From the NCBI GenBank assembly GCA_965644495.1, contig CBFFSA010000081.1:1-22000 (forward strand): a stretch of DNA of 22,000 bases, given 5' to 3'. Below, in pieces: positions 4,579-22,000 of this stretch. The notes beneath the pieces are model-generated. The model searched no databases, had not been told where the DNA came from, and saw only the letters and a program-made list of their open reading frames with translations. Origin of the DNA: Perkinsela sp. CCAP 1560/9 (taxonomy: Eukaryota > Protista > Euglenozoa: Kinetoplastea). Both the position numbers and the translations under genes were made by a program. Position 1 is the stretch's first letter. Each line of letters starts with the position of its first letter.

Positions 4579-5126
4579 TAGCGGCCGTATTCTCGACCAA
4601 ACTTATGTTTGTAACGAAGATAGTGCAAATTCTCAAACGCGGGCTCCACTGAAACCATCGAAAACGGACGTCCTGCTCGCGCGTGCAACCCGCAATCTTG
4701 GAGGTGTTTCGAGATCGTGTCGAGACTTTCTCTCAAACTTATGGCATCCCCCGCAACCGCACCAGGATCTTTTGAGTTTCCAAATTGTTTGCGAATTTCA
4801 TGCTCCAATCGTCCAATTAAATTGTCCCGGTATAGATCACTGCAGAAATGTCGGTATTCCCATTCTTTTGGGCGGAAAAGCTTTTCGTGGGGGAGGTCAT
4901 GGGCCGCAGGATCATACCCGCCAGGCGCCGACACACTCTTTGCTGCCATTCCCAGAGCTTCCCGAATTTGCGCGGATTGCCGCTCCACCGTAGCTTCCAA
5001 CATACCGATGCGCTCTTGATCAATCTTCGTTGACGCCATGAGTTCCTCCATACGCTGCATCATTCTGGTATTATCCCCCAACTGCTGGATCACATCTCTC
5101 GGAGAGGGTGGCTGACCTTCGGCCAT
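4341..5126 (-). CDS. Gag-like ORF1 of YR element (261 aa, copy 2)
   Basis: Protein identical to 584-1369. ATG at 5126; the track's longer start is not an ATG. Confidence 0.6.
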   Translation of the reverse strand: MAEGQPPSPRDVIQQLGDNTRMMQRMEELMASTKIDQERIGMLEATVERQSAQIREALGMAAKSVSAPGGYDPAAHDLPHEKLFRPKEWEYRHFCSDLYRDNLIGRLEHEIRKQFGNSKDPGAVAGDAISLRESLDTISKHLQDCGLHARAGRPFSMVSVEPAFENLHYLRYKHKFGREYGRYWKETARSAPMDDQYTQAHEATMSYYQNMSIAQGAAMNAKNGGGRGYGERFRGPFRGVGRARGGRGMASRNGHNIAGSQ

Positions 5127-5363
5127 GGGAATGGACGATTGGTTAGTAGTTTTCCGAAAACGAAAGCGTTCTAAAATATATATATATCTTTCGGAAAACC
5201 CCAACAGAAATACTCTGATTTTTTTATGCTATAAAAAATCCATTTATACTAAATTATCTTTTTTTTTTATGGGGTGGAATAAGTCTTGCATTTGAAAGTA
5301 CCCATTGTGAGTCTGCGGTGTAGATTGTGGTTGCGCAGGTGTAAGGGCAGCGGGAGGAGAAAA

Positions 5364-5859
5364 TTTTTTTTTTTTTTTTTTTTCGTACATGGAGGTAGAA
5401 CTTTCAACCCATTCATATCATGATGTACATTATCAGATATCTTACTCCTGTGATTCACATTCAGATTCATATTACACATTCATATCTCGTTTTCCAATCC
5501 ACCGACATCACATCCACCGACATCCACCGACATCACATCAGATTCTTCGCCTGTGGTATCATCGGAGGCGCCTTCGCAATCTTCAGGATGTTTGGATGAA
5601 TCTCTCTCCTCATCGGAATCATTCTCGGACTCTTGTGAGGTCGGCCTTGCATCAGAAAATTTTATCCTTGGCCGTCGGTAGTTGCTATGTACCTCGTGGT
5701 CGGCCCAGTTCGGCGATAATTCCTTTGCACTCATAATAACTCTCACACGGGGGGTTTTCTTTGGCTTATCGAGCGTTGATCCCCTCTTCATAATTTGTTC
5801 GGCGTTTTGCGTGTTCATACGAGTAAAAATAAAAATAAAAACAACAACAAGGTACAGAA
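5364..5859 (-). other. Retrocopy of a trans-spliced, polyadenylated transcript (partial SL + 5'UTR + ORF + A20)
   Basis: Minus strand reads TTCTGTACCTTGTTG (5859-5845), a 26-nt U-rich UTR, ATG at 5818, stop at 5480, then poly(A) = T20 at 5364-5383. Confidence 0.7.
5480..5818 (-). CDS. Hypothetical 112-aa basic/acidic low-complexity protein (MNTQNAEQ...)
   Basis: First ATG after the SL fragment. No recognisable domain. Confidence 0.4.
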   Translation of the reverse strand: MNTQNAEQIMKRGSTLDKPKKTPRVRVIMSAKELSPNWADHEVHSNYRRPRIKFSDARPTSQESENDSDEERDSSKHPEDCEGASDDTTGEESDVMSVDVGGCDVGGLENEI

Positions 5860-5903
5860 CCCTCTTTCTCCCACCAAACACTGGAAATTGCTCCCCCATG
5901 CCT

Positions 5904-6230
5904 GTAGGCCACGTGGTGGTAATAGTACTGCTAACCTAACTCCTCTCCAAGCGGAGGTCAGCCGTAGCTTGCTATGGCTGGCTCTCCGGATACGTCGCAA
6001 GACGTATTCGGACTGCCCGTTTGGGGAGTTGAGGGGCCATAACTTTTCGGAGTCAAAAGGCCCAATACATCATCATCAATAGTACTGCCACTGCCCTCCG
6101 TGGGCTTGCGTCTTCCAGGTACACCCATCTGCAGGGCACTCTCGTTGCGGCGGATCTTCCTCAGAAATGGGCGGGGTCGCAGGAACCTGGTCACTTGCCA
6201 GGGTCGGGGCCTGAGGAGTGGTCACTCGTG
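5904..6230 (+). ncRNA. Unidentified highly structured RNA-like segment
   Basis: Nested stems with G-U pairs that work only on +, and stable tetraloops: GTCAGCCGTAG-CTTG-CTATGGCTGGC, TCCGGATACGTC-GCAA-GACGTATTCGGA, ACTT-TTCG-GAGT, CCAAGCGG/CCGTTTGG, AACTCC/GGAGTT. Confidence 0.5.
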
Positions 6231-6260
6231 ATACGTTTTCCGTAGGTCTGATACGTTTTC

Positions 6261-6350
6261 TTTTGTTAAGACCCTTTCTTTTGTTAAGACCCTTTCTTTT
6301 GTTAAGACCCTTTCTTTTGTTAAGACCCTTTCTTTTGTTAAGACCCTTTC
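6261..6350. repeat. Perfect 18-bp tandem array (TTTTGTTAAGACCCTTTC)x5
   Basis: Read directly from the sequence. Confidence 0.97.
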
Positions 6351-6383
6351 TTACGTTATCCCTCCGGGTGTAGATCCTTAAGC

Positions 6384-9098
6384 TTTTTTTTTTTTTCGTA
6401 TTCCTAATTTATCCTCCTACCTTTTCCACTTCTTCCTATTACTACCTTATCCACCAAATAAGTCCAGACTCGGACTCGACTCTAATAAGCATACTCATCT
6501 TTCGGATCCGGTAAGTAGCTACGCAATTGCGCCTGAACTATCGCTCCATTCAATTCCTGTTGAAGAAGCACAAAATCATTCAGAATCGCCTTGGGTTCGC
6601 GGTAGACCTTTTCCGCCAGGAGCTGTAGTAGAGATTTTGTGTTATTGTGGAGAGCCCCGCAGGACAATATAGGGAGGCATTGAAATTGATCATTTCGCAA
6701 CATAGTTGATTTTACATATTTCGCATGCTTCCGAGCGATGGCGTCCTGCAACGCCTTTTGTGCTGATACCCTTTCATAAGAAGGTGATAGCTCATGTACC
6801 ACGGTTAGGTCATAGTACGTCGCGCCAGAAGCCCAATATATCACAAGGTCAGGGCCTGATCGGTGCAATGCTGCACCCCGACATAATTTCGCGTGTTCGA
6901 TCTTGTTTTCTTCGCTTAACACTTGTGAACATGCAGAGCAAGTGTAAGAGGTAAATTCTCTGGGCTCACGGGCGCATGGCAGACCTGCTTTCAGACATAA
7001 CTCATAAATATATCTCGTCAGAGAATTATGTTTGGTTGTCGCGTTAATTCCAGAACAGCGTACGCATCCAGGTATGTGGGTCATAGCGCTAGCTGCATCT
7101 AATAGAGTCCTGCAACCTGGGCACAGTAGAGAGTCGGGAAGTTTGGGATGACGAATACCAAGCCTTGGCATCACAGAAAGCGTAAATTGCATTGGAGGGA
7201 TGTATCTTTCGGTGGCGTGTATCCATTGGTAGCTTCCTTTTCTGGACGTCGCTGATATAATTCTACCGATTTTGGGATCTTTACACAGCTCTTCTTTCAC
7301 TTGTTTGTGCAACTTGAGATCTACTGCCCCTTCTTCGTCCGGCACTACCCTCGAGATCGACATCCCCAAGTGTCTCCCATCCTGAGCTGAATATACTTTT
7401 CGGCGCTCTAAGGATGCGTGACGAGAAGCTGCATATGAATTTTCCCGTAGTGCATAAGTTGATGAAAGGCCGAAACCTCCCATTTTCAGCGGCATTCTGG
7501 CCCACTTCAGTTGCATATCCGATAGTTTGCCAAACCACGACTTTAAGACTCTATCGACCTCCGTGTCGAATTCCGACGCAATTTTTTCGGTAGCTTGAGG
7601 CTTGTGGACTCTAATGTGAAACCTATGACGAACGTTAACGCTCTTGGACAAAATCAGGGATGAAAAATTGCTCGCCCCCATTTTTTGGAGCCGGCGAAAT
7701 ATATTTTTGTGCTTCTCCAGCTTTTGTATCAAAAGTTCGCTCACAGGCATATCTTCTCCGATAAAGGCACCTAATATTTTTATTGCAATCGTTTCCTTCT
7801 TCACTCCCGCTTGCAATAAATCTTCAGGTATGTCAGATCCGCTCTTTCCTTGAAAAAATATACATTTGTTGCGCGCCAGTTGGACCTTTCTTTGTTCTAG
7901 CAGTCCCTGCAGTCGGAAAAACGCTTTGGATAGCGCTTCACTATCATCTGACGCCATACTAATGTCGTCTATGTATGCCAACACTTTAATATTTGGGAAT
8001 TCATTAGCAATTGTGGCCAGAATCGGCTGTATGAAAGCACAGAAAAGAAGTGTTGACATTGGCGACCCTTGACGAACTCCTGTTGCGCTACTCACGGTGC
8101 CGCACATCCTTCCATGTACTCCATAGTATAGTAATTCTGAGGGCTCTGAATATTCGGCTGCAAAGAGACGTTGGAACGGGCGTAATGTTGCGTAGCCGAA
8201 AACGCACTTTGCAATTTCGTCTCGATTCGGAGAATTAAAAGCATTTCTCAGATCAATAGTTACTATGGCGTTGCCTTTATTGTAAAGATCGTGAAGATTA
8301 TGCACTACCTGTTCGCATCCGGATCTCGCCAGCACTCCGAACTGCCATGGCTCGAAAAGAGTGGCCAATGAATGCTCGTAACGCTGAAGAAGTACCACTT
8401 CCGCTAGCTTTAAGAAGATTTCTCCCACAGCTACCGGACGAACCCCTCCGTCAACTTTGGGAATCGCTATTAGCCTGGCCCTCTTCAGACGTACCATGAC
8501 TGACTTTTCAAGACGTCCATTTATGAGGTCCGCCATCATGTGGCATAGTGCAGTGCAAGAAATCTCGTCGTCTAATAATAACCTCACAATGCAATCAGTC
8601 GTGCCTGTCGGCCCCGGCGCTGCACCCTTGGCCAAATTACGACCTGCTGCCCGTAGTTCCTCGGTAGTTAATGCTGCTATGCATGGTGCATCTGATGGTA
8701 AATTGAAAGTGCAATCAGCGGTGGGGTGCAAATCTCTAAGCTTTGATAGCACTTCCTCATCGGAAAGTTTTGTCGGGCACGTCTGCTGATCAAGAACTTT
8801 TGTTGCTTTCGTTGTGCACCCTTCAAGCATAAGGCGCGTCGCCTTTTTAATAGCTCGCGCATCGATCGATTCCTCACTCATTTGATCCTCGTGTTCCATG
8901 TTTTCATTGAAAGGACGCCGCCGTCTGCGCTTAAGACTCGCTTCTCGAACCGCTGTCAACGAGAACTTCATAGCCGACAGGACTTTGTGCCAGATAATCC
9001 GTCGATACTCGTAGGTGCTGTCTGAGTATTCTCTCATTATGTCACGGTAAATCGCGACCGCGCAGGGGGCGAATTCTGGTTCTATCGTTTTGGCTTTC
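6384..9098 (-). mobile_element. 5'-truncated CRE-like non-LTR retrotransposon, family A
   Basis: T13 tail at 6384-6396, ~85-nt 3'UTR, and an RT-RLE frame that stays open right up to the 18-mer array at 9099. Confidence 0.88.
6482..9037 (-). CDS. Reverse transcriptase + Zn knuckle + restriction-like endonuclease (N-truncated)
   Basis: GGVRPVAVGE, IDLRNAFN, GVRQGSPMS, AYIDDI, ILGAFIG, GGFGL, CPGC..HIPGC, KHN, PD..DLTV (PD-D/ExK type). Confidence 0.92.
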   Translation of the reverse strand: MREYSDSTYEYRRIIWHKVLSAMKFSLTAVREASLKRRRRRPFNENMEHEDQMSEESIDARAIKKATRLMLEGCTTKATKVLDQQTCPTKLSDEEVLSKLRDLHPTADCTFNLPSDAPCIAALTTEELRAAGRNLAKGAAPGPTGTTDCIVRLLLDDEISCTALCHMMADLINGRLEKSVMVRLKRARLIAIPKVDGGVRPVAVGEIFLKLAEVVLLQRYEHSLATLFEPWQFGVLARSGCEQVVHNLHDLYNKGNAIVTIDLRNAFNSPNRDEIAKCVFGYATLRPFQRLFAAEYSEPSELLYYGVHGRMCGTVSSATGVRQGSPMSTLLFCAFIQPILATIANEFPNIKVLAYIDDISMASDDSEALSKAFFRLQGLLEQRKVQLARNKCIFFQGKSGSDIPEDLLQAGVKKETIAIKILGAFIGEDMPVSELLIQKLEKHKNIFRRLQKMGASNFSSLILSKSVNVRHRFHIRVHKPQATEKIASEFDTEVDRVLKSWFGKLSDMQLKWARMPLKMGGFGLSSTYALRENSYAASRHASLERRKVYSAQDGRHLGMSISRVVPDEEGAVDLKLHKQVKEELCKDPKIGRIISATSRKGSYQWIHATERYIPPMQFTLSVMPRLGIRHPKLPDSLLCPGCRTLLDAASAMTHIPGCVRCSGINATTKHNSLTRYIYELCLKAGLPCAREPREFTSYTCSACSQVLSEENKIEHAKLCRGAALHRSGPDLVIYWASGATYYDLTVVHELSPSYERVSAQKALQDAIARKHAKYVKSTMLRNDQFQCLPILSCGALHNNTKSLLQLLAEKVYREPKAILNDFVLLQQELNGAIVQAQLRSYLPDPKDEYAY

Positions 9099-9321
9099 TT
9101 TTGTTAAGACCCTTTCTTTTGTTAAGACCCTTTCTTTTGTTAAGACCCTTTCTTTTGTTAAGACCCTTTCTTTTGTTAAGACCCTTTCTTTTGTTAAGAC
9201 CCTTTCTTTTGTTAAGACCCTTTCTTTTGTTAAGACCCTTTCTTTTGTTAAGACCCTTTCTTTTGTTAAGACCCTTTCTTTTGTTAAGACCCTTTCTTTT
9301 GTTAAGACCCTTTCTTTTGTT
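9099..9321. repeat. Perfect 18-bp tandem array (TTTTGTTAAGACCCTTTC)x12 plus a partial unit
   Basis: Read directly from the sequence; same unit as 6261-6350. Confidence 0.97.
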
Positions 9322-10048
9322 TTGTGTCCCTTGCCAGACTGTGAAATCCAGCGAGTTCGGGTCTTAATGTCTGCGTTGTAAAATGCTTGCCCGAATTCGT
9401 GTGATCTTTGTTGCTATTACAATAGATTTCAAAATATCTGCATAATCATCGAGTATGATGCGCGCTGTCTAAACTAAAAACACCATGAACTAACGACTGG
9501 GAAGTCTCCATTCGCATAATCCGCGGTTTGGCCTATTCGTGATGTGGATAGATGTTTCAGTGCGCTAAGGAGAAATCTGATAGTGATCTTAGTAATGATA
9601 AAATCTTGTAATAATAACATCTTGTAATATGAGATGACCTGTTTTATTGCATTGTCTTTCGCAGTTGCGAAGCCAGGAGAGCTCCGTTCAATTCTTGAAG
9701 AAGCAACTTGAAGTCCTCAAGAATATGACGGCGTTCGAATCCGTTTGCATCCGCGAGGCTATGGAGGAAATTTATAGTGCTCTTGTTCATGGCACCACCT
9801 GTCAAAAGCGGTAGGCATACGAATTGCTCGCGCGGAATTAAATTGGAGTCCACATATGTTGCGACTTTCTTTTTTTGAGCCTCTTGTAATAGGTGACTCG
9901 CTTTTTTTCCCAAGTGTGATTTCGCAAGTTCGTTGACTACTGTGAGATCGTAATAAACTTCGCCCGTCGCCCAGAACACAACTAAGTCAGGTCCACTGCG
10001 GTGAAACGAATGTGTGCCACATTTCCTCTGATGATGTAGTGAAAGTTG
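9315..10048 (-). mobile_element. 3' fragment of an A-related element (family D): RLE end plus 3'UTR ending in the 18-mer repeat
   Basis: ORF 9644-~10048 HRSGPDLVVFWATGEVYYDLTVVNEL aligns with family A HRSGPDLVIYWASGATYYDLTVVHEL. There is no poly(A) tail; it ends in the array. Right boundary approximate. Confidence 0.8.
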
Positions 10049-11123
10049 AAAGGGCAACTTGCGGGTCTTCTAGGCTTTGTATTGCCAGGAGAGTGTCTAC
10101 AGCGGGGTCGATTGCATGTTCCTCTAGGTAGGTACGACAAAATTCGGAAGAACCTATGGGGCTCCCAAGAATAGAAAAATTGCCTTGGAAATTCTTTTGT
10201 TCGCGAGGGATTTGATAAAAAATGTCTGTCTGCATTGCTGAAGCAGGGTGGGTGATAATTTCGCACTTCTCCGGGTTGAGAAACATACCCCACTTAGGCC
10301 CCACTTCCGCTATCACGCGCAGAGCATTTTGTACTTCGTATGATGGACCTGCCAAGACTCCGTCGTCAAGGTACCACATGTGGAGCTGAAGTCCTCCGGA
10401 CGAAATTTTAATTTCTTCCGAAACTTGGAGCATGACGAGGGAAAAAAGTAGTGGCCCTAAGGGGTCGCCTTGTTGCGCGCCTTCCTCGGATGAAATTCGG
10501 ATTTGGCCATAGGTCAGAGCACTTGTAGTACCGTAGCACCACTCCACCCAGCGTGAAAGCTCTGGAAAGTAATGTCGTGTCAACGCAATGAAGGCGGCAC
10601 GAGAAACATTGTTGAACGCGTTCTTCAGATCTACTTTACAGAGGACGAAATCGGAGTTCTCAGAATTTTCGTGCATTGTTTTTCGACAAAGGTGAATTAG
10701 ACGCTCAGCTCCAGCAGGTGTGGCTACCCCAAATTGTGTTCCGGCGAAAAGTTCACGTGCCTTAGTTCGTACTGCTAGACATGCTGCTTTGCTAGTCAAA
10801 CGGCGTAATGTCTCCCCGGCAGCTATCGGTCGTACACCACTCTCCCCTTTTCTGAGTGCACACAGTCGCGCGCCAGCAAACGCTTCTTGCACGTCCAACG
10901 GTGCTTTGCCTTCGAGGAGGTGATTCGTGAGAGCTGTTAGTGCAGAGAGCGGTGTGACGTCGAGATCTTCATTGACGAGTAGTGCAGCTTGAAGGTGTTC
11001 TGCCCGCAGCCCCATAGTCCCGCTGGATGACCCTCGGTGAAAACCTTTTAGTGCGTTTCGTACATCCGTTTCTCCTAGTGTAAGCACCCCCGGGCCTAGG
11101 GGAGGCATATCTACGGGCGGCTC
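10049..11123 (-). pseudogene. Internal RT fragment of a CRE-like element (family E, related to B/C), truncated at both ends
   Basis: GVRPIAAGE, KVDLKNAFN, GAQQGDPLGPLLF, WYLDDG. Homology to B/C stops after DPQVAL(S), where it is fused to D. The 5' side abuts the T23 run. Confidence 0.85.
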
Positions 11124-11275
11124 TTTTTTTTTTTTTTTTTTTTTTTATATGATTTTAAAACAAGCAATCAAATTAGCAATTTCATATTTTGGAGCCCAAA
11201 ACTAGAAATTCGATCTCCCGTAAGTATAAGAACATTAAAAACAATAACAATAAAAACAAGCAATATATGCCCAAT

Positions 11276-11515
11276 CCATTCGCGCGTTCCGGACCGGGTC
11301 TTTCGACCTCTCCACGGCCTGACTTGTGAACCCTTCCCTTGTTATATGGGAGGGCGCAGGCGCGGGCCTGTGTCGACAGCGACACGGTCGCGAAACAGGA
11401 TGCTGGCCGACGGGGAGGAAGTTTTAGTTCCCGACCCATGTCCTACCTCACTTGGAGTACCTAGCCCTTGAGGGCTAGGCGTGAGCATAGACCCTGTCGG
11501 CATCGACCAGCATCC
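11276..11515. ncRNA. Conserved ~240-nt structured module in the 3'UTR (B type)
   Basis: Several stems. Near-identical to 16792-17024, 21312-21551, 15339-15521 and 21898-22000. The functional strand is unresolved. Confidence 0.6.
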
Positions 11516-11579
11516 AGACCAGCCATCTATGAGGGCGCAAACGTGGGTCTGTGCTGACTGCCGTCCGGTCAGGAAACGT

Positions 11580-14500
11580 TTACTCCCCCAAGCAAGAAAA
11601 CGGGTCATCAGGGAGAAGGCGATTAACCATCATGCGGGCCTGAAGGCGCATGAGGGTCACGTTTAACTCCGTGAAGATTCTGCTCGTCGCCCCCCCTTCT
11701 GTCAATAACCCGCACGAGGCGTGCGAAAGCCGTTCTCCAACTTTACGGAGTACTGCGGATGCACCGCTGCTCCACGCACCGTAGCTCTCCACCACCATGG
11801 CGGTGAAGGCACAGCCGGCTTCTTCAGATTCGTGTCTCTGCTGGCCCTTTTGCGTTGATGAATATTGTTCAGCAAATGACCCCGCGGTTACCCAGCTAGC
11901 ATTCCGGACTTTGTCCGTATATTTTAGTTGCTGAGCATGGGTGACCGCGAAGTCAAGTACAATCGGATTCCCCAACTGGAGACCGGGCAAATAGACATCA
12001 CCGGGTCTGGTGAGGGCGCCCCCTGGACCTCTGTTGCCAAGACTTTTTTCTCGTTGTGGGGCCAGTTTGGCTCTGCTGCAAAGGTCGGCGAACTGATCTG
12101 CCACGGCATTATGCCTCGTGATAATTCCATTGCCGTGTTTGCAGGACAATACGTGGTCCCCTTTGGTGTCCAGTGGGAGAGAACATTTCGGCATAGGGCA
12201 TTTCCCTTCTTCAGGGTAGACGTCGATCCCTAACCACCAGCGGGCCAAGGTTCGAAACTCTGTAGGAGTAAAGGAATACCCCATGTCCTTAGACGGGGTT
12301 ACAAAAGCCCAACTGCTTGCCCCTTTCCCGCATTGAGATATCCATCTTGTTCGTGTTCGCACATCTGACATCTCGTACGAATGAGAGAAATCATAGGCCG
12401 CGATCGCGTAGCTGATGTCTCGTTGGCGTGGAATCTTCCCTTTCCTCCATTGTGGGGGATCTGTATCAGTACAATCCTCCGAGGCATATAATGGTGTAGA
12501 TAAGTGGATATCTTCAGGGATGTGCATGGTGCGGGAAGTTGTACGGAGCGCGGGTGGTAGGGAGTTCTCTGAGGGAGGGTTATCGTTGACACTTAGGGTA
12601 CGTTTCCTTTTTCGGTAAAAGAAGGGACTACTAACTGCTTTTTCGCAAGGGGCGTTCGGCGTTGTAAGGATCCGACCTCGGGGATCAAGTAAAGATGTTC
12701 CAGCTTTCTGGTTGATGTCCCTGACAGCTTCCACAAATCCATCCGCATCAGAGGGGTTCCATGAATCTTTGTCCGCAGAGAAGGCGACGGAAGATACGTA
12801 TGCGGCAGTGGCGTGTAACGCTGCGGATCTTAACCCAAAACCGCCGTGCCGCTTCAAACGTTGTGCCTGAGATCGGGCGTAGGGGTCCAGGGGGCAAATT
12901 ATAGCTTCGGTGGCGGTCATAAGAAAATCGTCGAGTCGGGCGCAGAGATGGGCTATGGTTTGGGGTGGTGTGCTTCTCAGGGCGTAGACCATCTGGCAGA
13001 AACCGGCACACTGCCTGATAAGAGCGAGTGCAACCTGTGGGTCCCGAATGGTGGCGATCGCGTCGAGCGTATCCTCAGCGGGGCCTATGGCGTGGATCGC
13101 GAGATACTCTGAGCAGTGTTCGGGCGATCCCACCGGGCTTCCAAGGATGTCGAAATTGCCATGGACGTTGATCTTATTGACGGGTATGTCTGGAAATTCA
13201 GAGGCGTGGTGTGACGAGGTCGGGGGTGTAATGATCTCGCATTTAGACATGTTAAGGAATAAGCCCCATTGCGGACCTACTCTGGCAATCGTGTCGAGGG
13301 CGTTCCTGACGTCTTGCGCCTGGCCAATGAGGACACCGTCGTCGAGGTACCACAGCTGGGCGAAGAGGTCCGCCTGAAGATCGATTGCTTCTGAGAGCGC
13401 TAAGGACACTAATGAGAAGAGTAGTGGTCCTAAAGGGTCGCCCTGCTGCACTCCTTCTTCGGAAGAAAGTGATCGGAGTCCGTAGGTAAGGGAGCTGGGA
13501 TTTGCGTAGCACCAGTTTATCCATGGGAATAGCTCAGGGAAATGTTCCTGGACTAGAGGTAGAAAGCAAGCTCTGCTCACGTTGTTGAACGCGTTCCGGA
13601 TGTCAACTTTGCATAGTACAAAATTGGGGCAATCCATGTTCGATGAAATAGCCAAGCGGCACATGTGGATTATGCGCTCAGCCCCTGCTGGTGTAGCTAC
13701 ACCATATTGCCGACCAGCGAAAAGAGTACTAGCTTTGGACCGAACCGCGTTGCACGCAGCCTTGCTCACCAACCGTCTCACAGTTTCTCCTGCGGCAATT
13801 GGGCGGACGTCGTTTTCGCCTTTCTCTAAAGCGCACAGCCGGGCTCCAGCAAAGTGACTCTGTACTTCCACTGGTGCTTTTCCCGCTAGGAGGTGATTCG
13901 CCAGCTTCGTTAGAGACTGGAGTTAATTAATGTTCTTGCCTCCGTGGGTAAGTATCGCCGCTTGTAAGTGCTCGGGGCGCAGTCCCATTGTGCCCGCGGA
14001 GGAGCCTCGGTGAAAACCCCTTACCGCCTTCTCAATTTCGGATTCGTCCAACTCCAGGGGTGCTGCAGCGGGGAAGTGGTTGACGCTCCCAGGGATGAGC
14101 AGACGGCAGGGGTGTTTTTCTTGTAGCTTAGAGAACGTGTCATCATCGTCCGGAGCCATTGGATCCGACGTTAGAGCAGCCAAGCCTCTGGAATATTCCC
14201 CCTGCCGGACGAGGAGTTCTGCCCTTAGTGTGGCTTTCTCTTCTTCATCACTAACCTCGGTAGGGGTTGCTTCCTTTTTGCGGTAGGTCGTCACGGCCTC
14301 TTTCCAGAGGAGGGAATAATCCAACGCAAGCCAACGCTGCATGCAACTGTAGGCGTGGGAAGCATATGCCATGTGGCCTTTGCCGCCTCCACGGCGTGGG
14401 GCGGGGAGGACACATTTGGGTAGCATGGCCAGCAAGGTCCACGACTGCAGTGAATTGTCTTTGACGGCGTTATCCATGGTCTCCGTAAGAATTTCACCCC

Positions 14501-14909
14501 ACAGCTGGCGGCATCGATGTGGTACGTCCTTGCATGTACTAAGCGGTAGCGAGCAGATAGTTGATAATGATGGAAGCTCAAACTGAGTGATTCCGGCTCT
14601 CCGTCCTGGGCTCTCCGCGTCAGGAAGGGTTTGCGCATGAAGCTCGGATGGCGGAGAGGCCATTGTTGCTTTGCAGCTATGGGAGTGATATGAACGTTTG
14701 TTTTTGTCGTAGTTTCGCCCGCAAGAAGAACAAAGGAAGCGACCTTCTACATCCCACCACTCTGCGGGAATGCTGCTTCCGTGCCGGCAAGCGACGTGGT
14801 TGTAAAAAGCTTGCCACGACCCGCCGTGTGGCAAGCTCCGCCATGAACATCCCTGAGCCGGGCACTGTCGAGAATCGTCTCCGTTGAGGGGAAAAGATGC
14901 GCCTTGTGA
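11580..14909 (-). pseudogene. ZnF-RT-RLE polyprotein with one in-frame TAA (13923-13925)
   Basis: Track ORFs 13923-14834 and 11580-13871 share a frame (KNIN*LQSLTKLANHLLAGKAPVEVQ). Motifs: CPAQGC..HVACRH, GVQQGDPLGPLLF, WYLDDG, CPMPKC..HVLSC, RHN, RPGD, LDFAVTH, VESYGAW. Confidence 0.88.
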
Positions 14910-15051
14910 TTTTTTTTTTTTTTTTTTTTTTTTTAGTAAAAAAATATAGTTTTAATATACAATGTATAGTGTTTCAAAGTTTATAGTACTATAATAGTAC
15001 TATAAAATAGTTTTTATAGTTTTATGGACCTCTGCTATAAATCAGTATCAA

Positions 15052-15521
15052 TTTTTTTTTTTTTTTTTTTTTTGGTTTGCAATTAATAAGGGGGGAGAAG
15101 TATGAATCGCGGCATTGCCTCTATATTTTGACCCAGTAGACGAACCAAGTACATAGTAGGTCCATTAGGGGGGTATATGAATTTGAAACAAGCAATCAAA
15201 TTAGCAATTCTTTTCTTTTCCACAGAAGTATATTTTCTTTTTCTTTTTTCTCAGCCCAAAACTAGCAATTCAATCTCCCCTAAGTATATACGACAAATAA
15301 GACACAGTAAAAATAAAAACAAGCAATCCAGACCCAATCCATTCGCGCGTTCCGGACCGGGTCTTTCGACCACTCCACGGCCTGACTTGTGAACCCTTCC
15401 CTTGCTATACGGGAGGGCGCAGGCGCGGGCCTGTGTCGACAGCGACACGGTCACGAAACAGGATGCTGGCCGACGGGGAGGAGATTCACTACCCGTGTAC
15501 TACCTCACTTGGGGTACCTAG
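15052..15521 (-). mobile_element. 3'-end-only fragment of a B/C-family element with the most distal poly(A) site
   Basis: T22, then 3'UTR sequence, then a mostly C-like structured module broken off at GGGGTACCTAG where the array starts. Confidence 0.8.
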
Positions 15522-15953
15522 TTTTTTATTAAGACAACGTTTTTTATTAAGACAACGTTTTTTATTAAGACAACGTTTTTTATTAAGACAACGTTTTTTA
15601 TTAAGACAACGTTTTTTATTAAGACAACGTTTTTTATTAAGACAACGTTTTTTATTAAGACAACGTTTTTTATTAAGACAACGTTTTTTATTAAGACAAC
15701 GTTTTTTATTAAGACAACGTTTTTTATTAAGACAACGTTTTTTATTAAGACAACGTTTTTTATTAAGACAACGTTTTTTATTAAGACAACGTTTTTTATT
15801 AAGACAACGTTTTTTATTAAGACAACGTTTTTTATTAAGACAACGTTTTTTATTAAGACAACGTTTTTTATTAAGACAACGTTTTTTATTAAGACAACGT
15901 TTTTTATTAAGACAACGTTTTTTATTAAGACAACGTTTTTTATTAAGACAACG
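15522..15953. repeat. Perfect 18-bp tandem array (TTTTTTATTAAGACAACG)x24
   Basis: Read directly from the sequence; runs straight into T25. Confidence 0.97.
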
Positions 15954-16595
15954 TTTTTTTTTTTTTTTTTTTTTTTTTCCAACTTTTCCACAATTTCCAC
16001 ACTTACGGCCCTTCACTTTCCCTTACTCCCCATACTTTCCACACCTACTCCTCTTAGCCCTCTCGTACTTCCCTTCCCTCACTCCCTACCCCACTCACCG
16101 ATCCGCATGCACCCAGGCCCGTATGGTCCTGCACCTCCGCCCCCACCCCGTTAGCAGTAATAAATACTTTTGGTTGCCGTACGAGGGTGGGAGACGTGGA
16201 GGCCACGAAACACAAAGACGTCGTCACGCCGAGGGAGAAGAGCGCGGAGAGAGACACGGGGCGACTGACGCAGGGGCGAGAGGAGGCGAAGCACGGGCCC
16301 ATCTGCCAGGAACTCTGCCCCCACCCCGTGAGCAAGTATTGTATACTTTTGGCTGCTGACACGGGGGTGGGGGACGCGAGAGAGAAACACAACAGGGGGG
16401 CAAGCGCACTGCGGAGGGAGGGTGAGGTGGGGGGATGCGGCGCAGGGGGGTGATGGGACGAGACGGGGAAGGGGGATGCCGACAAAAAGGAGTGTATTTG
16501 AGGGGGGTGCCCTCCCATGGTCTGGAAGATGGTGTATGGAAGAAAAGGGGAAATAATTCAACAAGGTACAGAAACTGTATCTTTATCGTTAAAGA
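15954..16595 (-). mobile_element. ~620-nt SL-headed, poly(A)-tailed non-autonomous (SINE-like) unit or retrocopied ncRNA
   Basis: SL-like sequence at 16559-16595, T25 tail, and a GC-skewed body with a duplicated hairpin. No convincing ORF. Confidence 0.6.
16559..16595 (-). other. Spliced-leader (mini-exon)-like sequence TCTTTAACGATAAAGATACAGTTTCTGTACCTTGTTG
   Basis: Contains the kinetoplastid/diplonemid SL core ACAGTTTCTGTAC, has TAACG near the 5' end and ends in TTG. Not followed by the GT of an SL intron. Confidence 0.85.
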
Positions 16596-16791
16596 CAACG
16601 TTTTTTTTTTTTTTTTTTTTGCTCTTCATGGGCTCAAACGTGTTCCCCGCAAACGTGTTTTTTTTTTTTTTTTTTTTAAGCAATAAAATTAGCAATTTCA
16701 TATTTTGGAGCCCAAAACTAGCAATTCGATCTCCCGTAAGTATAATAACAATAATAACAATAATAATAAAAACAAGCAATCCACGCCCAAT

Positions 16792-17024
16792 CCATTCGCG
16801 CGTTCCGGACCGGGTCTTTCGACCTCTCCACGGCCTGACTTGTGAACCCTTCCCTTGCTATATGGGAGGGCGCAGGCGCGGGCCTGTGTCGACAGCGACA
16901 CGGTCGCGAAACAGGATGCTGGTCGACGGGGAGGAGATTCACTTCCCGTGTACTACCTCACTTGGGGTACCTAGCCCTCGCGGGCTAGGCGTGAGCATAG
17001 ACTCTGTCGACTCGACCAACATCC
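16792..17024. ncRNA. Conserved structured 3'UTR module (C type)
   Basis: Homologous to 11276-11515 with compensatory and wobble-preserving changes. Confidence 0.6.
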
Positions 17025-17040
17025 AGGCCAGAAGTTTTCC

Positions 17041-20000
17041 TTACTCTTCTTTGCCATACCCCACAAGTGCAGGGCCTGTGTTCGCCGAGGGGAGGCGAAG
17101 AACGAGCATACGCGCCTGGGAGCGCATGAGGGTGACGTTCAGACTTGTTAGTATTTGCTGTAACGCCCCCCCTTGCGAAAGTGTTCCACCTGAGGTCGCA
17201 GCTTGGCCTTTCGAGACTTCCCGCAAGACCGACATAGCGGCCGGACTCCAGCATCCGTATGTTTCGACAGCCATAGCTGTGAACTTGGTCTTCGCTTCTT
17301 CAGCTTCCTCCCGTTGCTTCCGCTTGTGTTCGACGGCGTACCTCTCGGCGAATGACCCGGCTGCCACCATGTTAGCATCACGGACCAGGTCCGTATACTT
17401 TTGTTGCTGAACATGTGTGACAGCGAAATCAAGGACGAGGGCCTGACCGAGACCACCGTTCCGGACATAGACATCTGCGGGTCGCGTGAGGGCGCCGCCC
17501 GGACCCCTGTTTCCCAGAGAGACTTCTCTCTGTGGGCTCAACCCGGCCTTGCTGCATTCAGCGGAGAACTGTTCCGCTAGGGCGTTGTGCCTTGTAATGA
17601 TTCCGTGGCCGCACTTGCAGGCTAGCGCATGGTCCCCCCCAGGGCCGAGTGGGAGGCGACAATTCGGAATCGGGCAGTTGTGACCTTGAGGGTATATACT
17701 CTCCCCGAGCCACCAACGAATCAGAGTCCGAAATTCAGTAGGGGTGTAGGCATGACCGCAGAGAGTTGAGGGAACCGTGAAGGCCCAGTTGGATGCCCCG
17801 TCGCCCGTTTGTGAGAGCCACCTAGCCCGAGTGCGGGGATCCGCTCTTGCGTAATCTTCCTCAAAGTCTCTCGCTGAAATCGCATGACTGAGATCGCGTT
17901 GTCGAGGAATCGTCAAATCTTGAGAAAGGTCAATATCGGGGGAGGGCGAGAAGGGGCATCTCTTTATGACGGAGTCCTTGTGGATTTTCCCGGTAGATTT
18001 GTCCACCATACACCCCCCTACACGCCGGTTAATGTCCTCCACGGCGTAAGAAAAGCCCTCAGCCTCATTTGCATCCCATCGATCCTTGTCGGAAGCGAAA
18101 GCTACTGAAGCTACGTACGCTGAGGTGGCATGCATTTCCGCTGAGCGAAGGCCGAGACCGCCGAACTGTTTATTTCTTTGTGCTTGTCGTCGAGCCATGT
18201 CACTCAGTGGGCGACAAAACGTTTCAACCGTACGCTGAACGGCGTTGTCGAGTCTGCGACATAAGTCCAGTAGTTCGTCCGTCGGCGTCGTGCGAAGGGA
18301 GTAAACCATCTGGCAAAACCCTGTGCACTGTCGGATGAGAGAGAAAGCGACCTGAGGGTCCTCCAGTTTCTCGATCGCTTCAAGGGATTCCTCCGCCTGG
18401 GAAATCGCGCTGTCGAGGAGGAACTGACGGCTGTACGTCGTAGATCCGATGGGGCTTCCCAAGATGCTCAGATTACCTTCCATGTTGATGTTGAGCCCGG
18501 GAATGTCAGGAAAGTGGGTAGTTTGATGAGATGAGGAAGGGTGTGTGATTATTTCGCACTTGGACGGATTGAGGTTCAGACCCCACTTTGGCCCTCCAAT
18601 TTCGATGATATCTAGTGCGTGACGTACATCAGAAGCCTGGCCTGCAAGGACGCCATCATCAAGGTACCAGAGATTGAGATGAAGATCAGGAGCTCCGGCC
18701 TTAATTTCTGCGGCCATTTCTCTCATGACGAGCGAGAACAAAAGGGGTCCGAGCGGGTCTCCTTGTTGTACGCCTTCAGAGGATTGAACTACACGTGCGC
18801 CGAATGTCAGGTTACTGTCCGAACTGTAGCACCATTCCACGAACGGGCTCAACTCAGGGAAATGATGCCGTGTCAAGGCCATAAAGCTATTTCTTGAAAT
18901 GTGATTGAAAGCGTTGCGAAGGTCAACCTTGCATAGCACAAAATCCTCGTTATTGATGTGGTGCGCAACCAGGCGCCTGCAAATGTGGATAACACGTTCG
19001 GCTCCTGCGGGCGTCGCCACTCCATATTGTTGATCTTTGAAGAGCGTTCTGGATTTAGCCTTTGCAGACAGACATCCTATCTTGCTCGCTAGTCGGCGGA
19101 AGGTTTCCCCTGCGGCAATGGGGCGGACATCACCCTGACCCTTGTGTAAAGCACATAAGCGTCCGCCGGCGAAGCAGTGTTGGACTTCAAGTGGTACTTT
19201 GCCCGCTAGCATATGACTAATAAGTTTCGTGAGCGTACCGAGCGGATCTGTCCTGGCGTCGTGATGGAATTGCACTGCTACTTGTAGGTGCTCAGGCCGA
19301 AGTCCGAGAGCTCCCCCTGAGGAACCTCGGTGAAAGCTGGAAAGCGCCGTAATGATGTCCTCTTCGGTTGCGGTGATCGGTTTAATATCCAAAGAAGGCG
19401 TGGTAATCGGACTTGGACCCAGAAGTCGAGACGGGTGTTTCGCCTGGAGCTTTTGATAAGTCGTGTCATCGTTTGGGGCAAGTGGTTCGGATGTCAACGC
19501 AGTCATTGCGCGGGAAAGTTCACCATCTCGCACGAGGCGTACTGCTCGGAGCGCAGCTTTCTGATCCTCCTCTTCAATGCTCTGAGCCTGTGGAGAACTT
19601 TTCCGCTTACGCTTCAGGCTTGACAAGGCCTCGTTCCAAAGTGGTAGAAATTCCTTGTTCTTCCATCTGGAAAGGCATTTGCGGACGTGGGAGGTGTATG
19701 AGGCTTTACCCTTGTCCCCGCCGCGTCGTGGTGCTGGAATTACACATTTAGGTAACATAGCCAGCAGGGTCCAAGCCTCGATGGTGTTGTCACGTACGGC
19801 CGCCGCCATGCATTCGGTAAGTGTTTTCGCCCATTCAGGCTTACAGCTGTTTGGGATATTTTTGCAGGTATTGACGGACAAGGCGCATACTGATGATAGG
19901 GACGGCAGATCTTCCACTGTTGGGGCGCCTTGCATAGTGTTCTCGCTAAGCTGCTGCTCAGGGTGGTGCTCAGTAACGGAATTTGGGGGCGGGACGGGGT

Positions 20001-21057
20001 AATCTTTGGAGCCAGCGGAGGAACCATGCGAAGGTTTGGGTGACGGCGTGCGAAACCTGCAGTGCATCTTGTGTGTTGCTTGCTTGCGCATGGAGTAGTG
20101 CTTTTTGCAACCCGGGCATAGGAATCTTCCCTCCTCTGTCCACCATGATTCCGCCACTTCTTCCCCATGTCTGTTAGCCACATGGTTGTAAAAGGCTTGC
20201 CATTGATCGCCGTGCGGCCCTGTTTCCCAGGTACATGAATCCAAGGGGCATTTCCTGGGCCGACTTGGTGTGCTAATAATGGGGGCGGGCGTGCTTTTAG
20301 ATGACTCGGCGTTTCGGGAGGTTAATGGGCGTCGGTGTCGCTTGAGACTTACTGAAGTGTCCGCATGGGGCTTTATGTCCGGTTTTTTCAGAGATGATGC
20401 CGCAGACAGATTGCTGTCACTTTCAGCCTCAGGAGTGTATGGCCTAGGGGAGTTGGAACTTGATTGTGCGGTGTCACGGTCGTCGCTGTCGGCCCCGGAC
20501 TCAGCACACAATTGGGAAAGGGAGATGCTCTTGGGTCGCTTCTTCTTTTTCCGTCCTTTTCCGCATCCATTCACAGACACAGTAAGGTCTTCAGGAGTGA
20601 GATCGGGGAAGAGCAATTTATCTTTTTCGTAATTATATTCGTTGTCGTATGACCTCCGGATATGTCGTTCGCACCTCTCCTTCACAGCCTTATTTGTGGT
20701 TTTTGATAGGCTGAGTGAAGAAGATTCTGCTCCCGCAAACTGGAATTCGAAGTCCTCAGTTGGACGGACGCTGGAGAAAAGTTCCTCTTCCGTGCTTGTC
20801 TGCTGTTGCCCTGTATCTGGGGTCTCACCTTCCACAGAGTTCGTAATGCTGAGTGCAATCTCGTCCGCTCGCCGTAAAGATTCAGCTGAAGGATTAGGTG
20901 GGAGGGGTGTAGTGTATAAGTCTACATGGTACGTACTCTTGCCTTCAACAAGGTCCTTGTTTGCGTCGAATTGGTCCCAGCAGCCGAGTGTGTGTGCTTT
21001 CACCTCGCGCTCGAAGTTCGAGACCTGCTTCGCCTTAGATCGAGTTAAAACAACCAT
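17041..21057 (-). CDS. Intact CRE-clade polyprotein (1338 aa): Zn fingers, RT, CCHC knuckle, restriction-like endonuclease
   Basis: First ATG after the SL is at 21057. Motifs: CPLDSC..HVANRH, CPGC..HKMHC, VRPIAAGETFRRL, KVDLRNAFN, GVQQGDPLGPLLF, WYLDDG, GGLGL, CPIPNC..HALAC, RHN, RPAD, LDFAVTH, VETYGCW. Confidence 0.95.
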   Translation of the reverse strand: MVVLTRSKAKQVSNFEREVKAHTLGCWDQFDANKDLVEGKSTYHVDLYTTPLPPNPSAESLRRADEIALSITNSVEGETPDTGQQQTSTEEELFSSVRPTEDFEFQFAGAESSSLSLSKTTNKAVKERCERHIRRSYDNEYNYEKDKLLFPDLTPEDLTVSVNGCGKGRKKKKRPKSISLSQLCAESGADSDDRDTAQSSSNSPRPYTPEAESDSNLSAASSLKKPDIKPHADTSVSLKRHRRPLTSRNAESSKSTPAPIISTPSRPRKCPLDSCTWETGPHGDQWQAFYNHVANRHGEEVAESWWTEEGRFLCPGCKKHYSMRKQATHKMHCRFRTPSPKPSHGSSAGSKDYPVPPPNSVTEHHPEQQLSENTMQGAPTVEDLPSLSSVCALSVNTCKNIPNSCKPEWAKTLTECMAAAVRDNTIEAWTLLAMLPKCVIPAPRRGGDKGKASYTSHVRKCLSRWKNKEFLPLWNEALSSLKRKRKSSPQAQSIEEEDQKAALRAVRLVRDGELSRAMTALTSEPLAPNDDTTYQKLQAKHPSRLLGPSPITTPSLDIKPITATEEDIITALSSFHRGSSGGALGLRPEHLQVAVQFHHDARTDPLGTLTKLISHMLAGKVPLEVQHCFAGGRLCALHKGQGDVRPIAAGETFRRLASKIGCLSAKAKSRTLFKDQQYGVATPAGAERVIHICRRLVAHHINNEDFVLCKVDLRNAFNHISRNSFMALTRHHFPELSPFVEWCYSSDSNLTFGARVVQSSEGVQQGDPLGPLLFSLVMREMAAEIKAGAPDLHLNLWYLDDGVLAGQASDVRHALDIIEIGGPKWGLNLNPSKCEIITHPSSSHQTTHFPDIPGLNINMEGNLSILGSPIGSTTYSRQFLLDSAISQAEESLEAIEKLEDPQVAFSLIRQCTGFCQMVYSLRTTPTDELLDLCRRLDNAVQRTVETFCRPLSDMARRQAQRNKQFGGLGLRSAEMHATSAYVASVAFASDKDRWDANEAEGFSYAVEDINRRVGGCMVDKSTGKIHKDSVIKRCPFSPSPDIDLSQDLTIPRQRDLSHAISARDFEEDYARADPRTRARWLSQTGDGASNWAFTVPSTLCGHAYTPTEFRTLIRWWLGESIYPQGHNCPIPNCRLPLGPGGDHALACKCGHGIITRHNALAEQFSAECSKAGLSPQREVSLGNRGPGGALTRPADVYVRNGGLGQALVLDFAVTHVQQQKYTDLVRDANMVAAGSFAERYAVEHKRKQREEAEEAKTKFTAMAVETYGCWSPAAMSVLREVSKGQAATSGGTLSQGGALQQILTSLNVTLMRSQARMLVLRLPSANTGPALVGYGKEE

Positions 21058-21093
21058 GGGGCGTAAGAGTGAGATAAAGAAAAGAAAATAATT

Positions 21094-21130
21094 CAACAAG
21101 GTACAGAAACTGTATCTTTATCGTTAAAGA
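21094..21130 (-). other. Spliced-leader-like sequence (identical to 16559-16595)
   Basis: 37-nt exact match at the 5' end of element C, directly abutting the next T24 run. Confidence 0.85.
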
Positions 21131-21566
21131 TTTTTTTTTTTTTTTTTTTTTTTTACGAACCAAGTAGGTCCATTGGGGGTGTATATGATTTTAAAACAAG
21201 CAATCAAATTAGCAATTTCATATTTTGGAGCCCAAAACTAGCAATTCGATCTCCCGTAAGTATAAGAACAATAAAAACAATAACAATAAAAACTAGCAAT
21301 CTATGCCCAATCCATTCGCGCGTTCCGGACCGGGTCTTTCGACCTCTCCACGGCCTGACTTGTGAACCCTTCCCTTGTTATATGGGAGGGCGCAGGCGCG
21401 GGCCTGTGTCGACAGCGACACGGTCGCGAAACAGGATGCTGGCCGACGGGGAGGAAGTTTTAGTTCCCGACCCATGTCCTACCTCACTTGGAGTACCTAG
21501 CCCTTGAGGGCTAGGCGTGAGCATAGACCCTGTCGGCATCGACCAGCATCCAGGCCAGCCATCTAT
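21131..21566 (-). mobile_element. 3'-UTR-only fragment of family B
   Basis: T24 plus sequence nearly identical to 11147-11530, cut at CCAGCCATCTAT. Confidence 0.85.
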
Positions 21567-21567
21567 A

Positions 21568-22000
21568 TTTTTTTTTTTTTTTATTGGGGGGGGTATACGA
21601 GTTGAAAACAAGCAATCAAATTAGCAATTTGAAAATTTAGCTTTTTTTTTTTTTTTTTTACTAAAAACTAGCAAACAATTCTTTTTTGAAAACAAGCAAT
21701 CAAATTAGCAATTTTATATTGTTTTTATGCAAATAAAGAAAATTTTTCTCTCTCTTTCTCCTCTTTCTCACCTCTTGACATACTTTTCCCACCTTTCTCC
21801 CTACTTTCCTGCTTTCCCCTACCCAACTTTTCAACTTTTCAGGGGGGGTAAGGTCTCCCTCAGCTTCGCCTCACCCGGCCTGCAGGCGGCTCCTCAACCA
21901 TTCGCGCGTTCCGGACCGGGTCTTTCGACCTCTCCACGGCCTGACTTGTGGACCCTTCCCTTGTTATACGGGAGGGCGCAGGCGCGGGCCTGTGTCGACA
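21568..22000 (-). mobile_element. Further 3'-end fragment(s) of B/C-related elements (runs off the window)
   Basis: T15 and T18 runs, AAACAAGCAATCAAATTAGCAAT motifs, a different pyrimidine-rich spacer, and the structured module from 21898. Confidence 0.7.

What the first reader, a model, noticed from the sequence alone, without database searches (positions are those of the whole stretch)
5259..22000. Unidirectional head-to-tail cDNA chain: candidate retrotransposon-built chromosome end in a euglenozoan
Seen: about 17 units in one polarity, most starting on + with a T-run (5259, 5364, 6384, 11124, 14910, 15052, 15954, 16601, 16658, 21131, 21568, 21642). They end at an SL or at an arbitrary truncation joined straight to the next unit. 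I found no target-site duplications, no element resuming after an insertion, no host genes, and no SL-gene or TTAGGG target array. Known: Drosophila HeT-A/TART and Giardia telomeric elements form polarised terminal arrays, R2-type RTs jump templates end to end, and kinetoplastid CRE/SLACS/CZAR normally insert site-specifically in SL genes. Inference: the + strand was extended rightwards by successive RT events on a free 3' end, by several divergent CRE families plus passenger RNAs.
Basis: partly seen in the sequence, partly recalled or inferred. Interest (0 to 1): 0.92.

Follow-up and report, generated by a model that had tools for sequence, protein, structure and literature searches.

The report
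One-way pile of retro-copied RNAs
This 22-kb contig of a kinetoplastid-type protist is a real head-to-tail, single-direction stack of DNA copies of trans-spliced, poly(A)-tailed RNAs, mostly R2-like jumping genes, but identical stacks lie inside megabase contigs, so nothing shows it is a chromosome end.

Summary
All 12 T-runs sit at the stated coordinates. All poly(A) tails, spliced-leader (SL) copies and 18-mer arrays read in minus sense, with no A-run of 8 or more on the + strand.

The units are DNA copies of processed RNAs. Two begin with a near-complete copy of the cell's own SL exon, whose real genes lie on contig C1, and one with a partial copy. Tails sit at different poly(A) sites of one shared 3' module. 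At least three divergent reverse-transcriptase families carry an R2-type RT and a C-terminal CCHC + restriction-like endonuclease.

- The left 5.2 kb (element Y) has the same polarity.
- A 147-nt structured element sits in one unit with a 10-bp target duplication.
- Several junctions lack poly(A) and look like template switches.

The telomere reading is not supported. The same chains occur deep inside contigs of 1.1-4.1 Mb, and their orientation near contig ends is mixed. C81 has no unique flank and cannot be placed. TTAGGG and a TERT domain were not found, but only 21 Mb was searchable.

Best reading: T-run-primed reverse transcription, mostly on earlier tails, plus template jumping. Other agents of this scan reached the same verdict on other pieces of this genome.

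The parts
1..1503 (-). Element Y, partial copy cut by the contig start. No RT; weak tyrosine-recombinase-like match.
   Evidence: 3757-nt direct repeat with 3758-5258; PF00589 E=0.08 over most of the profile
1504..5258 (-). Element Y, complete copy, bounded by a T7 run (1504-1510) at its 3' end in sense
   Evidence: At least 5 other loci end or begin exactly at this T-run (query positions 294-300)
5259..5363 (-). Unit 1: T10 tail plus a 95-nt fragment
   Evidence: no other copy found in the searched contigs
5364..5859 (-). Unit 2: T20 tail plus a retro-copied multi-copy mRNA (139-aa ORF), 5' end cut inside the SL (5845-5859)
5860..6247 (-). Unit 3: internal ORF fragment of an SL-headed RT element, joined on both sides without poly(A)
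   Evidence: 100% match to C22 (L003 788-1018), which lies inside a full SL-headed element
5932..6078 (+). 147-nt structured mobile element inserted into unit 3, with a 10-bp TSD at 5922-5931 and 6079-6088
   Evidence: At least 25 near-identical copies; filled versus empty site; fold z-score -7.1
6257..6352 (-). 18-mer array 1 (5.3 copies), entered through an 11-nt re-copy (GATACGTTTTC)
6384..9093 (-). Unit 4: T13 tail plus an RT element with an intact 851-aa ORF (6482-9037), RT and CCHC/REL-endonuclease
9094..9321 (-). 18-mer array 2 (12.7 copies), same unit as array 1, at the 5' end of unit 4
9322..9573 (.). Three short tail-less pieces (about 76, 110 and 68 nt), each a separate multi-copy sequence, joined with 2-5 nt overlaps
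9574..11123 (-). Unit 5: 5'-truncated RT element of a third family. Its 3' end has no poly(A) here, and at least 10 other copies end at the same point.
11124..14909 (-). Unit 6: T23 tail plus shared 3' module plus RT element, 5'-truncated, ORF broken at about 13871-13923
14910..15051 (-). Unit 7: T25 tail plus a 117-nt AT-rich fragment
15052..15520 (-). Unit 8: T22 tail plus a fragment of the shared 3' module (variant)
15521..15953 (-). 18-mer array B (24.4 copies); it ends in its own T-run, which runs into the tail of unit 9
15954..16600 (-). Unit 9: T25 tail plus an SL-headed non-autonomous element of about 620 nt. The SL copy is followed by 5-6 nt of the array-B unit.
16601..16657 (-). Unit 10: T20 tail plus a 37-nt fragment
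16658..21130 (-). Unit 11: T20 tail plus a full-length SL-headed RT element (intact ORF of up to 1352 aa, 17041-21099; SL copy up to 21130)
   Evidence: 99-100% identical copy on C43
21131..21567 (-). Unit 12: T24 tail plus a 3' module fragment, 99-100% identical to that of unit 6 but with a different poly(A) site
21568..21641 (-). Unit 13: T15 tail plus a 59-nt 3'-module fragment
21642..22000 (-). Unit 14: T18 tail plus a unit that runs off the contig end inside the shared 3' module

Best explanation
The whole contig is a transposon pile-up. It is a one-direction, head-to-tail stack of DNA copies of mature (trans-spliced, polyadenylated) RNAs.

The copies were made by R2-superfamily non-LTR retrotransposons (RT plus C-terminal CCHC/restriction-like endonuclease) that are themselves expressed as SL-capped mRNAs. 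Reverse transcription is primed from a T-run in DNA. Most often that T-run is the tail of an earlier copy; it can also be a T-run inside an 18-mer unit.

Because each new copy brings a new T-run on the same strand, polarity propagates itself. Insertions also break nothing and leave no visible target duplication. The RT often stops early, giving 5'-truncated units of 37-450 nt. Sometimes it jumps to another RNA, giving partial SL re-copies, internal-to-internal joins and joins into 18-mer arrays.

Shown: the anatomy, the RNA origin, the enzyme architecture, the young age, and the interior position of sister chains. Inferred: T-run priming, and the share of single multi-template events versus separate insertions.
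For: - Polarity and junction anatomy.
- RNA origin. The real SL genes on C1 continue into a GT intron, whereas in the window the SL exon is fused to element 5' UTRs and preceded by poly(A). Tails sit at four or more different sites of one 3' module.
- Enzyme. RVT_1 domains, best solved relatives R2. C-terminal CCHC, (R/K)HN, E, PxD and D spacing fits the REL consensus quoted in PMC12857005.
- Sister chains inside large contigs. Local orientation agreement of module copies in clusters on C4, C9, C41, C48 and others.
- Array B ends in its T-run exactly where unit 9's tail starts, and 5-6 nt of the array unit plus a T-run follow unit 9's SL.
- Template-switch signatures.
- Units are 98-100% identical to copies elsewhere, so they are recent.
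- A later TSD-flanked insertion shows the chain is resident DNA.
- Other agents reached the same reading on other pieces. That is a lead, not independent proof.
Against: - No reads could be laid, so junctions are not verified in raw data.
- C81 has no unique flank, so a terminal position is not excluded for this copy.
- In the other loci local polarity is only a trend: 14 same versus 6 opposite adjacent tails, P=0.12.
- Tail lengths are rather uniform (13-25 nt here, 12-31 on C4), which fits serial jumping onto fresh RNAs at least as well as splitting of old tails.
- The target preference of the endonuclease is unknown.
Confidence: 0.7

Rival explanations
1. Multi-template trains. Most of the chain was written in one or a few events, in which an R2-like RT extended one DNA 3' end (a nick or a double-strand break) and jumped end to end across many RNAs before the end was rejoined.
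For: - Junctions without poly(A) and with 0-5 nt overlaps.
- Partial SL re-copies at 5' ends on C22, C10 and C43.
- Very short units of 37-117 nt, each with a full-size tail.
- Neighbouring units from the same source variant but with different poly(A) sites (units 6 and 12; two units on C4).
- SL copies flanked by a duplicated exon start of 12 or 34 nt on C10 and C1. This is the product expected if a broken DNA end was extended on its own mRNA.
- Another reader flagged an 11.4-kb train inside one 8-bp duplication (unchecked).
Against: - At least 16.7 kb and 20 or more templates in one event would be extreme.
- Element Y and the 147-nt element are separate later or earlier DNA events.
- Units of different families and states (intact versus broken ORFs) sit side by side.
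Confidence: 0.17
2. One reading: a chromosome end maintained by retrotransposition onto the free 3' end, as with Drosophila HeT-A/TART, with 5' ends distal.
For: - One polarity and no flank; the contig ends inside an element.
- No (TTAGGG)3 and no Telomerase_RBD match in the 21 Mb searchable.
- The C5 right end and C7 left end carry arrays in the orientation this model needs.
Against: - The same chains are interior.
- Clusters at the C2 and C3 right ends and the C10 left end have the wrong orientation.
- Two contig starts carry a 12/13-mer array and C8's right end carries at least 6 kb of a purine 10-mer, not retro-units.
- Only part of the assembly is searchable. The public record names reach ctg3700, so absence of TTAGGG or TERT proves little.
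Confidence: 0.08
3. Artefact: a cDNA or whole-transcriptome-amplification concatemer, or a mis-assembly of repeats.
For: - The contig is short, made only of repeats, has no unique flank and no read support was seen.
- A sister record in the public assembly looks like a circularised tandem.
Against: - The same junction style occurs inside contigs of 1-4 Mb.
- Diverged (84-93%) copies of chain fragments exist.
- A DNA-level insertion with a 10-bp TSD sits inside unit 3.
- Two copies of element Y, which has no RT, no SL copy and only a fixed T7/A7 terminus, are part of the contig.
Confidence: 0.05

Closest known systems
Drosophila HeT-A/TART/TAHRE telomere arrays; also Giardia GilM/GilT and rotifer Athena/terminons (from general knowledge)
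   Same: Head-to-tail, one polarity, variable 5' truncation, poly(A) joined directly to the next unit, no target duplications.
   Different: Here the same arrays are interior, occur on both strands and have mixed orientation near contig ends. A terminal position is not shown for any of them.
R2 retrotransposon RT: target-primed reverse transcription and end-to-end template jumping (solved R2 structures 8gh6, 9nl2; jumping from general knowledge)
   Same: Best solved relatives of the RTs. N-terminal zinc-finger-like motifs, a C-terminal CCHC and a PD-(D/E)XK-like nuclease. Junctions look like jumps from an RNA 5' end to another RNA.
   Different: No 28S or other single target. Templates are SL-capped, polyadenylated mRNAs. 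Sequence identity to R2 is low (E 1e-5 to 1e-10).
CRE1/CRE2/SLACS/CZAR of trypanosomatids and MoTeR/FoTeR of fungi (PMC12857005)
   Same: REL-endonuclease motif spacing fits the published consensus. There is a link to the spliced leader, and members of the clade build telomere-associated arrays in fungi.
   Different: CRE/SLACS/CZAR sit inside SL genes, splitting the exon. Here a near-complete SL exon is copied onto the element's 5' end from RNA and the SL genes are untouched. No named CRE-clade protein appeared among the homologues, so clade membership is untested.
L1-type insertion into A-tails and trans-mobilised processed pseudogenes; dinoflagellate SL-tagged retrogenes (PMC6050394, PMC5585692)
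   Same: T-run priming on poly(A), stacking in earlier tails, 5' truncation, cellular mRNAs as passengers, and the SL kept as a DNA tag of retroposition.
   Different: The enzyme is of the REL-endonuclease type and not APE/L1. The SL-tagged copies are mainly the retrotransposons themselves. Stacks reach 16-64 kb.

Membership tests
Telomeric retrotransposon array (HeT-A/TART type) | Array lies at the physical chromosome end | tested here: inconclusive
   C81 is 22,000 b with no unique flank. Sister arrays are interior.
Telomeric retrotransposon array (HeT-A/TART type) | Uniform polarity with 5' ends distal at every end | tested here: not met
   SL-headed units near contig ends: C2 and C3 right ends are plus sense and C10 left end is minus sense (wrong); C5 right, C7 and C8 left are right. 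Contig ends need not be chromosome ends.
Telomeric retrotransposon array (HeT-A/TART type) | Head-to-tail units, poly(A) proximal, variable 5' truncation, no TSD | tested here: met
Telomeric retrotransposon array (HeT-A/TART type) | Absence of telomerase and of simple telomeric repeats | tested here: inconclusive
   No (TTAGGG)3 and no PF12009 match in 21 Mb, but the searchable set is partial. Long simple arrays exist at some contig ends.
R2-superfamily (REL-endonuclease) non-LTR retrotransposon | RT domain most like R2 | tested here: met
   RVT_1 E 1e-15 to 1e-22; best PDB hits are R2 proteins
R2-superfamily (REL-endonuclease) non-LTR retrotransposon | C-terminal CCHC plus RHD/N, E, R/KPD, D/E nuclease motifs | tested here: met
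   Read by eye in the translations of units 11 and 4 against the consensus quoted in PMC12857005. No profile or structure test was run.
R2-superfamily (REL-endonuclease) non-LTR retrotransposon | Single sequence-specific target site | tested here: not met
   Copies sit next to many different neighbours. The only common context is a T-run.
CRE/SLACS/CZAR clade | Insertion inside SL RNA gene exons | tested here: not met
   The SL genes on C1 are intact with their intron. Elements carry a near-complete SL exon copy preceded by poly(A).
CRE/SLACS/CZAR clade | Phylogenetic grouping of RT/REL with CRE1/2, SLACS and CZAR | not tested
   No reference sequences were at hand. Homologue searches returned only unnamed proteins plus dinoflagellate, moth and Diplonema hits.
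Retro-copies of trans-spliced mRNA (SL-tagged retroposition) | DNA copy of the SL exon fused to the transcript body, without the SL intron | tested here: met
   window 16556-16600 and 21086-21130
Retro-copies of trans-spliced mRNA (SL-tagged retroposition) | Untemplated poly(A) at alternative 3' sites | tested here: met
   Four or more tail positions in one 3' module

The most novel reading that the evidence does not exclude
In this kinetoplastid, R2-like reverse transcriptases extend free DNA 3' ends (nicks, double-strand breaks, perhaps eroded chromosome ends) by serial end-to-end jumps over capped, trans-spliced mRNAs. They write kilobase 'trains' of unrelated cDNAs in single events. That would be an RNA-templated break-healing activity that could also cap ends where no canonical telomere repeat is seen.
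Probability: 0.15. Interest if true: 0.8.

Novelty: new variant of a known kind. Interest (0 to 1): 0.5.

Why it matters
It shows a kinetoplastid-type genome in which REL-endonuclease (R2-like) retrotransposons travel as ordinary trans-spliced, polyadenylated mRNAs. They keep a DNA copy of the spliced leader, mobilise other RNAs, and stack into long one-way arrays. Such arrays look like telomeric retrotransposon arrays, yet the sister chains that can be placed are interior.

This matters in two ways. It warns against reading polarity and missing target duplications as proof of a chromosome end. It also offers natural material for studying template jumping by R2-type enzymes, which are now used as genome-writing tools. 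Three literature searches found no description of SL-headed R2-like elements stacked at tails, so the phenomenon may be unpublished. Within this scan it has already been seen on other pieces of the same genome.

Tried and rejected
- One genome search for unit 7 gave no answer.
- Rfam at E up to 0.1 and ARAGORN found nothing in the window.
- The Atlas search of the 981-aa ORF of element Y gave nothing, and that ORF looks like a wrong frame.
- I first took 5259 for a break inside element Y at a T7 run. One search showed it is Y's natural end.
- I first took the (C7-9 TGGAY)n arrays at the C6 and C9 starts for telomeres. They have about 600 short interior copies on both strands, and an earlier agent judged them an expanded satellite.
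- I considered the 18-mer arrays as the insertion target, or as 3' tails of the neighbouring unit. Their orientation relative to the chain is not constant (C3), and earlier agents found them to be 5' head repeats of another element family. This stays unresolved here.
- The 403-nt extra segment in the C43 copy of unit 11 is not a GT-AG intron and has no TSD.


Full report
WHAT IS THERE

The window is the whole of piece C81 (22,000 b) of a set of 110 contigs totalling 21.0 Mb. Three copies of the SL 3' end and three arrays of an 18-nt unit have the same orientation.

Read in minus sense, each unit ends in poly(A). It is followed at once by the 5' end of the next unit, which is either an SL copy or an arbitrary truncation point. 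If orientations were independent, eleven further tails matching the first has P about 0.001.

THE UNITS ARE COPIES OF MATURE RNAs

The real SL RNA genes lie on C1 near 661 kb. There the 38-39-nt exon runs into a GT intron. In the window the same exon is fused to the 5' UTR of unit 11 (a full-length element, 16658-21130) and of unit 9 (a non-coding rider of about 620 nt). In both it is preceded directly by the poly(A) of the upstream unit. Unit 2 starts inside the SL.

About 400 SL copies are scattered over the searchable contigs. A 3' module of about 300-450 nt is shared by units 6, 8, 11, 12, 13 and 14 at 87-100% identity. It is tailed at four or more different positions, as expected of alternative polyadenylation.

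THE ENZYMES

Four ORFs carry RVT_1, and their best solved relatives are R2 proteins. The C-termini of the two intact ORFs (up to 1352 aa, 17041-21099; 851 aa, 6482-9037) show CCHC, (R/K)HN, E, PxD and D in the spacing published for the SLACS/CRE/MoTeR restriction-like endonuclease.

The families are far apart, at 24-60% amino-acid identity. I therefore call them R2-superfamily REL-endonuclease elements. The CRE-clade label is untested.

- The left 5.2 kb is not a flank. Element Y (unit 3757 nt, no RT, a weak tyrosine-recombinase-like match) has the same polarity. In at least five other loci it begins and ends exactly at the T7 run, so 5258/5259 is its natural end. The contig holds no unique DNA at all.
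- Unit 3 (5860-6247) is an internal ORF fragment of an SL-headed element. It carries a 147-nt, strongly folded element present in at least 25 near-identical copies. That insert has a 10-bp target duplication, and the empty site is preserved on C22. So a TSD-flanked insertion with the host unit resuming does exist. It is a DNA-level event that happened after the chain was in the genome, which argues against a cDNA-concatemer artefact.
- Several junctions have no poly(A). Unit 2 switches inside its SL to the middle of unit 3. Unit 3 passes into 18-mer array 1 through an 11-nt re-copy. 9322-9573 consists of three short multi-copy pieces joined with 2-5 nt overlaps. On other contigs, partial SL re-copies precede full SL heads. 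These are the marks of RT template switching.

IS IT A CHROMOSOME END?

Nothing shows it.

- Chains of the same style lie deep inside large contigs. C4 at 513-515 kb of 1.13 Mb has eight consecutive minus-sense tails of 12-31 nt on 5'-truncated module fragments, meeting a plus-sense chain tail to tail.
- SL and module clusters lie at 1.44-1.61, 2.28-2.49 and 3.10-3.27 Mb of the 4.1-Mb contig C1.
- Within clusters orientation is locally uniform. Relative to contig ends it is mixed: the C2 and C3 right-end clusters and the C10 left end have the orientation a HeT-A-like model forbids, while the C5 right end and the C7 and C8 left ends have the allowed one.
- (TTAGGG)3 and the Telomerase_RBD family were not found. 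But the public assembly has record names up to ctg3700, so only part of the genome was searchable.
- Some contig ends carry long simple arrays instead: a 12/13-mer on C6 and C9, which also has about 600 short interior copies, and at least 6 kb of a purine 10-mer at the C8 right end.
- The position of C81 itself cannot be told.

MECHANISM

The simplest account is target-primed reverse transcription from T-runs. Array B ends in its own T-run exactly where unit 9's tail begins. After unit 9's SL, 5-6 nt of the array unit and a T-run follow. All other tailed junctions fit priming on the tail of an earlier copy.

Such insertions break nothing, leave only A/T duplications and copy the polarity of the target, so a pile grows in one direction. 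The tail-less junctions, the very short units and the neighbours from one source variant (units 6 and 12; two units on C4) show that part of the chain was written by template jumping within single events. How large that part is remains open.

Two SL copies flanked by a duplicated exon start (12 nt on C10, 34 nt on C1) are what one expects if a broken DNA end is extended on its own mRNA. This keeps a free-end mechanism alive, though not a telomeric one.

Most units are 98-100% identical to copies elsewhere, so the pile is young.

LIMITS

No raw reads could be examined and no further genome sequence could be fetched. The endonuclease target is unknown and the REL motifs were read by eye.

Earlier agents of this scan judged other pieces of this genome in the same way: internal pile-ups, stacking at poly(A) tails, 18-mers as element head repeats. 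I used these as leads and tested the interior position, the polarity and the tail junctions myself.

Noticed in passing
window 5932-6078 (TSD at 5922-5931 and 6079-6088): A 147-nt mobile element with a very stable fold (z-score -7.1) and an (ATC)n-like end. It has at least 25 near-identical copies and a 10-bp target duplication, and lies in the opposite orientation to the chain. No Rfam or tRNA match.
   Followed up: partly
L002 (C1:2477.6 kb and 2482.7 kb) and L010 (C10:6640): Solitary SL exon copies inserted at the start of a transcript body and flanked by a duplication of the first 34 or 12 nt after the AG acceptor. This is the product expected if a DNA break in the 5' UTR was extended by an RT on the gene's own mRNA and rejoined.
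   Followed up: partly
window 21122-21130 and 16586-16600; L006, L007, L009, L010, L011 SL heads: Retro-copied SL heads read either (A)n-CTTTAACG or (A)n-T-CTTTAACG, whereas the gene reads AACTTTAACG. This could be a mis-read or untemplated base at the hypermodified cap-adjacent nucleotides, or an SL gene variant.
   Followed up: no
window 1-5258; C8:704.4-709.8 kb, C31:76.5-81.6 kb, C25:65.6-71.2 kb: Element Y has no RT, a weak tyrosine-recombinase-like match and 30-nt internal direct repeats. It is bounded by a T7 run at both ends and is tandem in the window. The other loci hold a form about 1.6 kb longer, mostly a 1.3-kb extra segment. It may integrate at T-runs.
   Followed up: partly
L011 3328-3730 (C43): The C43 copy of unit 11 is otherwise 99-100% identical but has a 403-nt AT-rich extra segment inside the ORF, without TSD or GT-AG ends.
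   Followed up: partly
window 9322-9573: Three short pieces (76, 110 and 68 nt) are each multi-copy at 97-100% identity. One of them occurs in 362-nt tandem spacing on C16 and C21, like a small-RNA gene cluster. C/D-box-like motifs are visible on the + strand near 9540-9590.
   Followed up: no
C6:1-620, C9:1-100, C14:150-200; C8:793.7-799.6 kb; C1 right end; C5 right end: Contig ends carry several different simple arrays: a C7-9TGGAY 12/13-mer, a purine 10-mer of at least 6 kb, a degenerate 19-mer, and an 18-mer TTAAGAC array. No TTAGGG was found in the 21 Mb searched, so the true telomere repeat of this organism is unsettled.
   Followed up: partly
L004 5123-5700 (C2:964 kb), L003 6630-8045 (C22), L011 6680-6770: Families of 17-18-nt arrays are perfectly homogeneous within an array but differ between arrays (core GTCTTAA or variants). 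On C2 two arrays face each other in opposite orientation.
   Followed up: no
L041/L042 (public record ctg3700c, 21,425 b): A sister chain with two copies of the unit-11 RT at a 10.55-kb period, in a record whose name suggests a circular contig. It is either a tandemly amplified chain segment or an assembler artefact.
   Followed up: no
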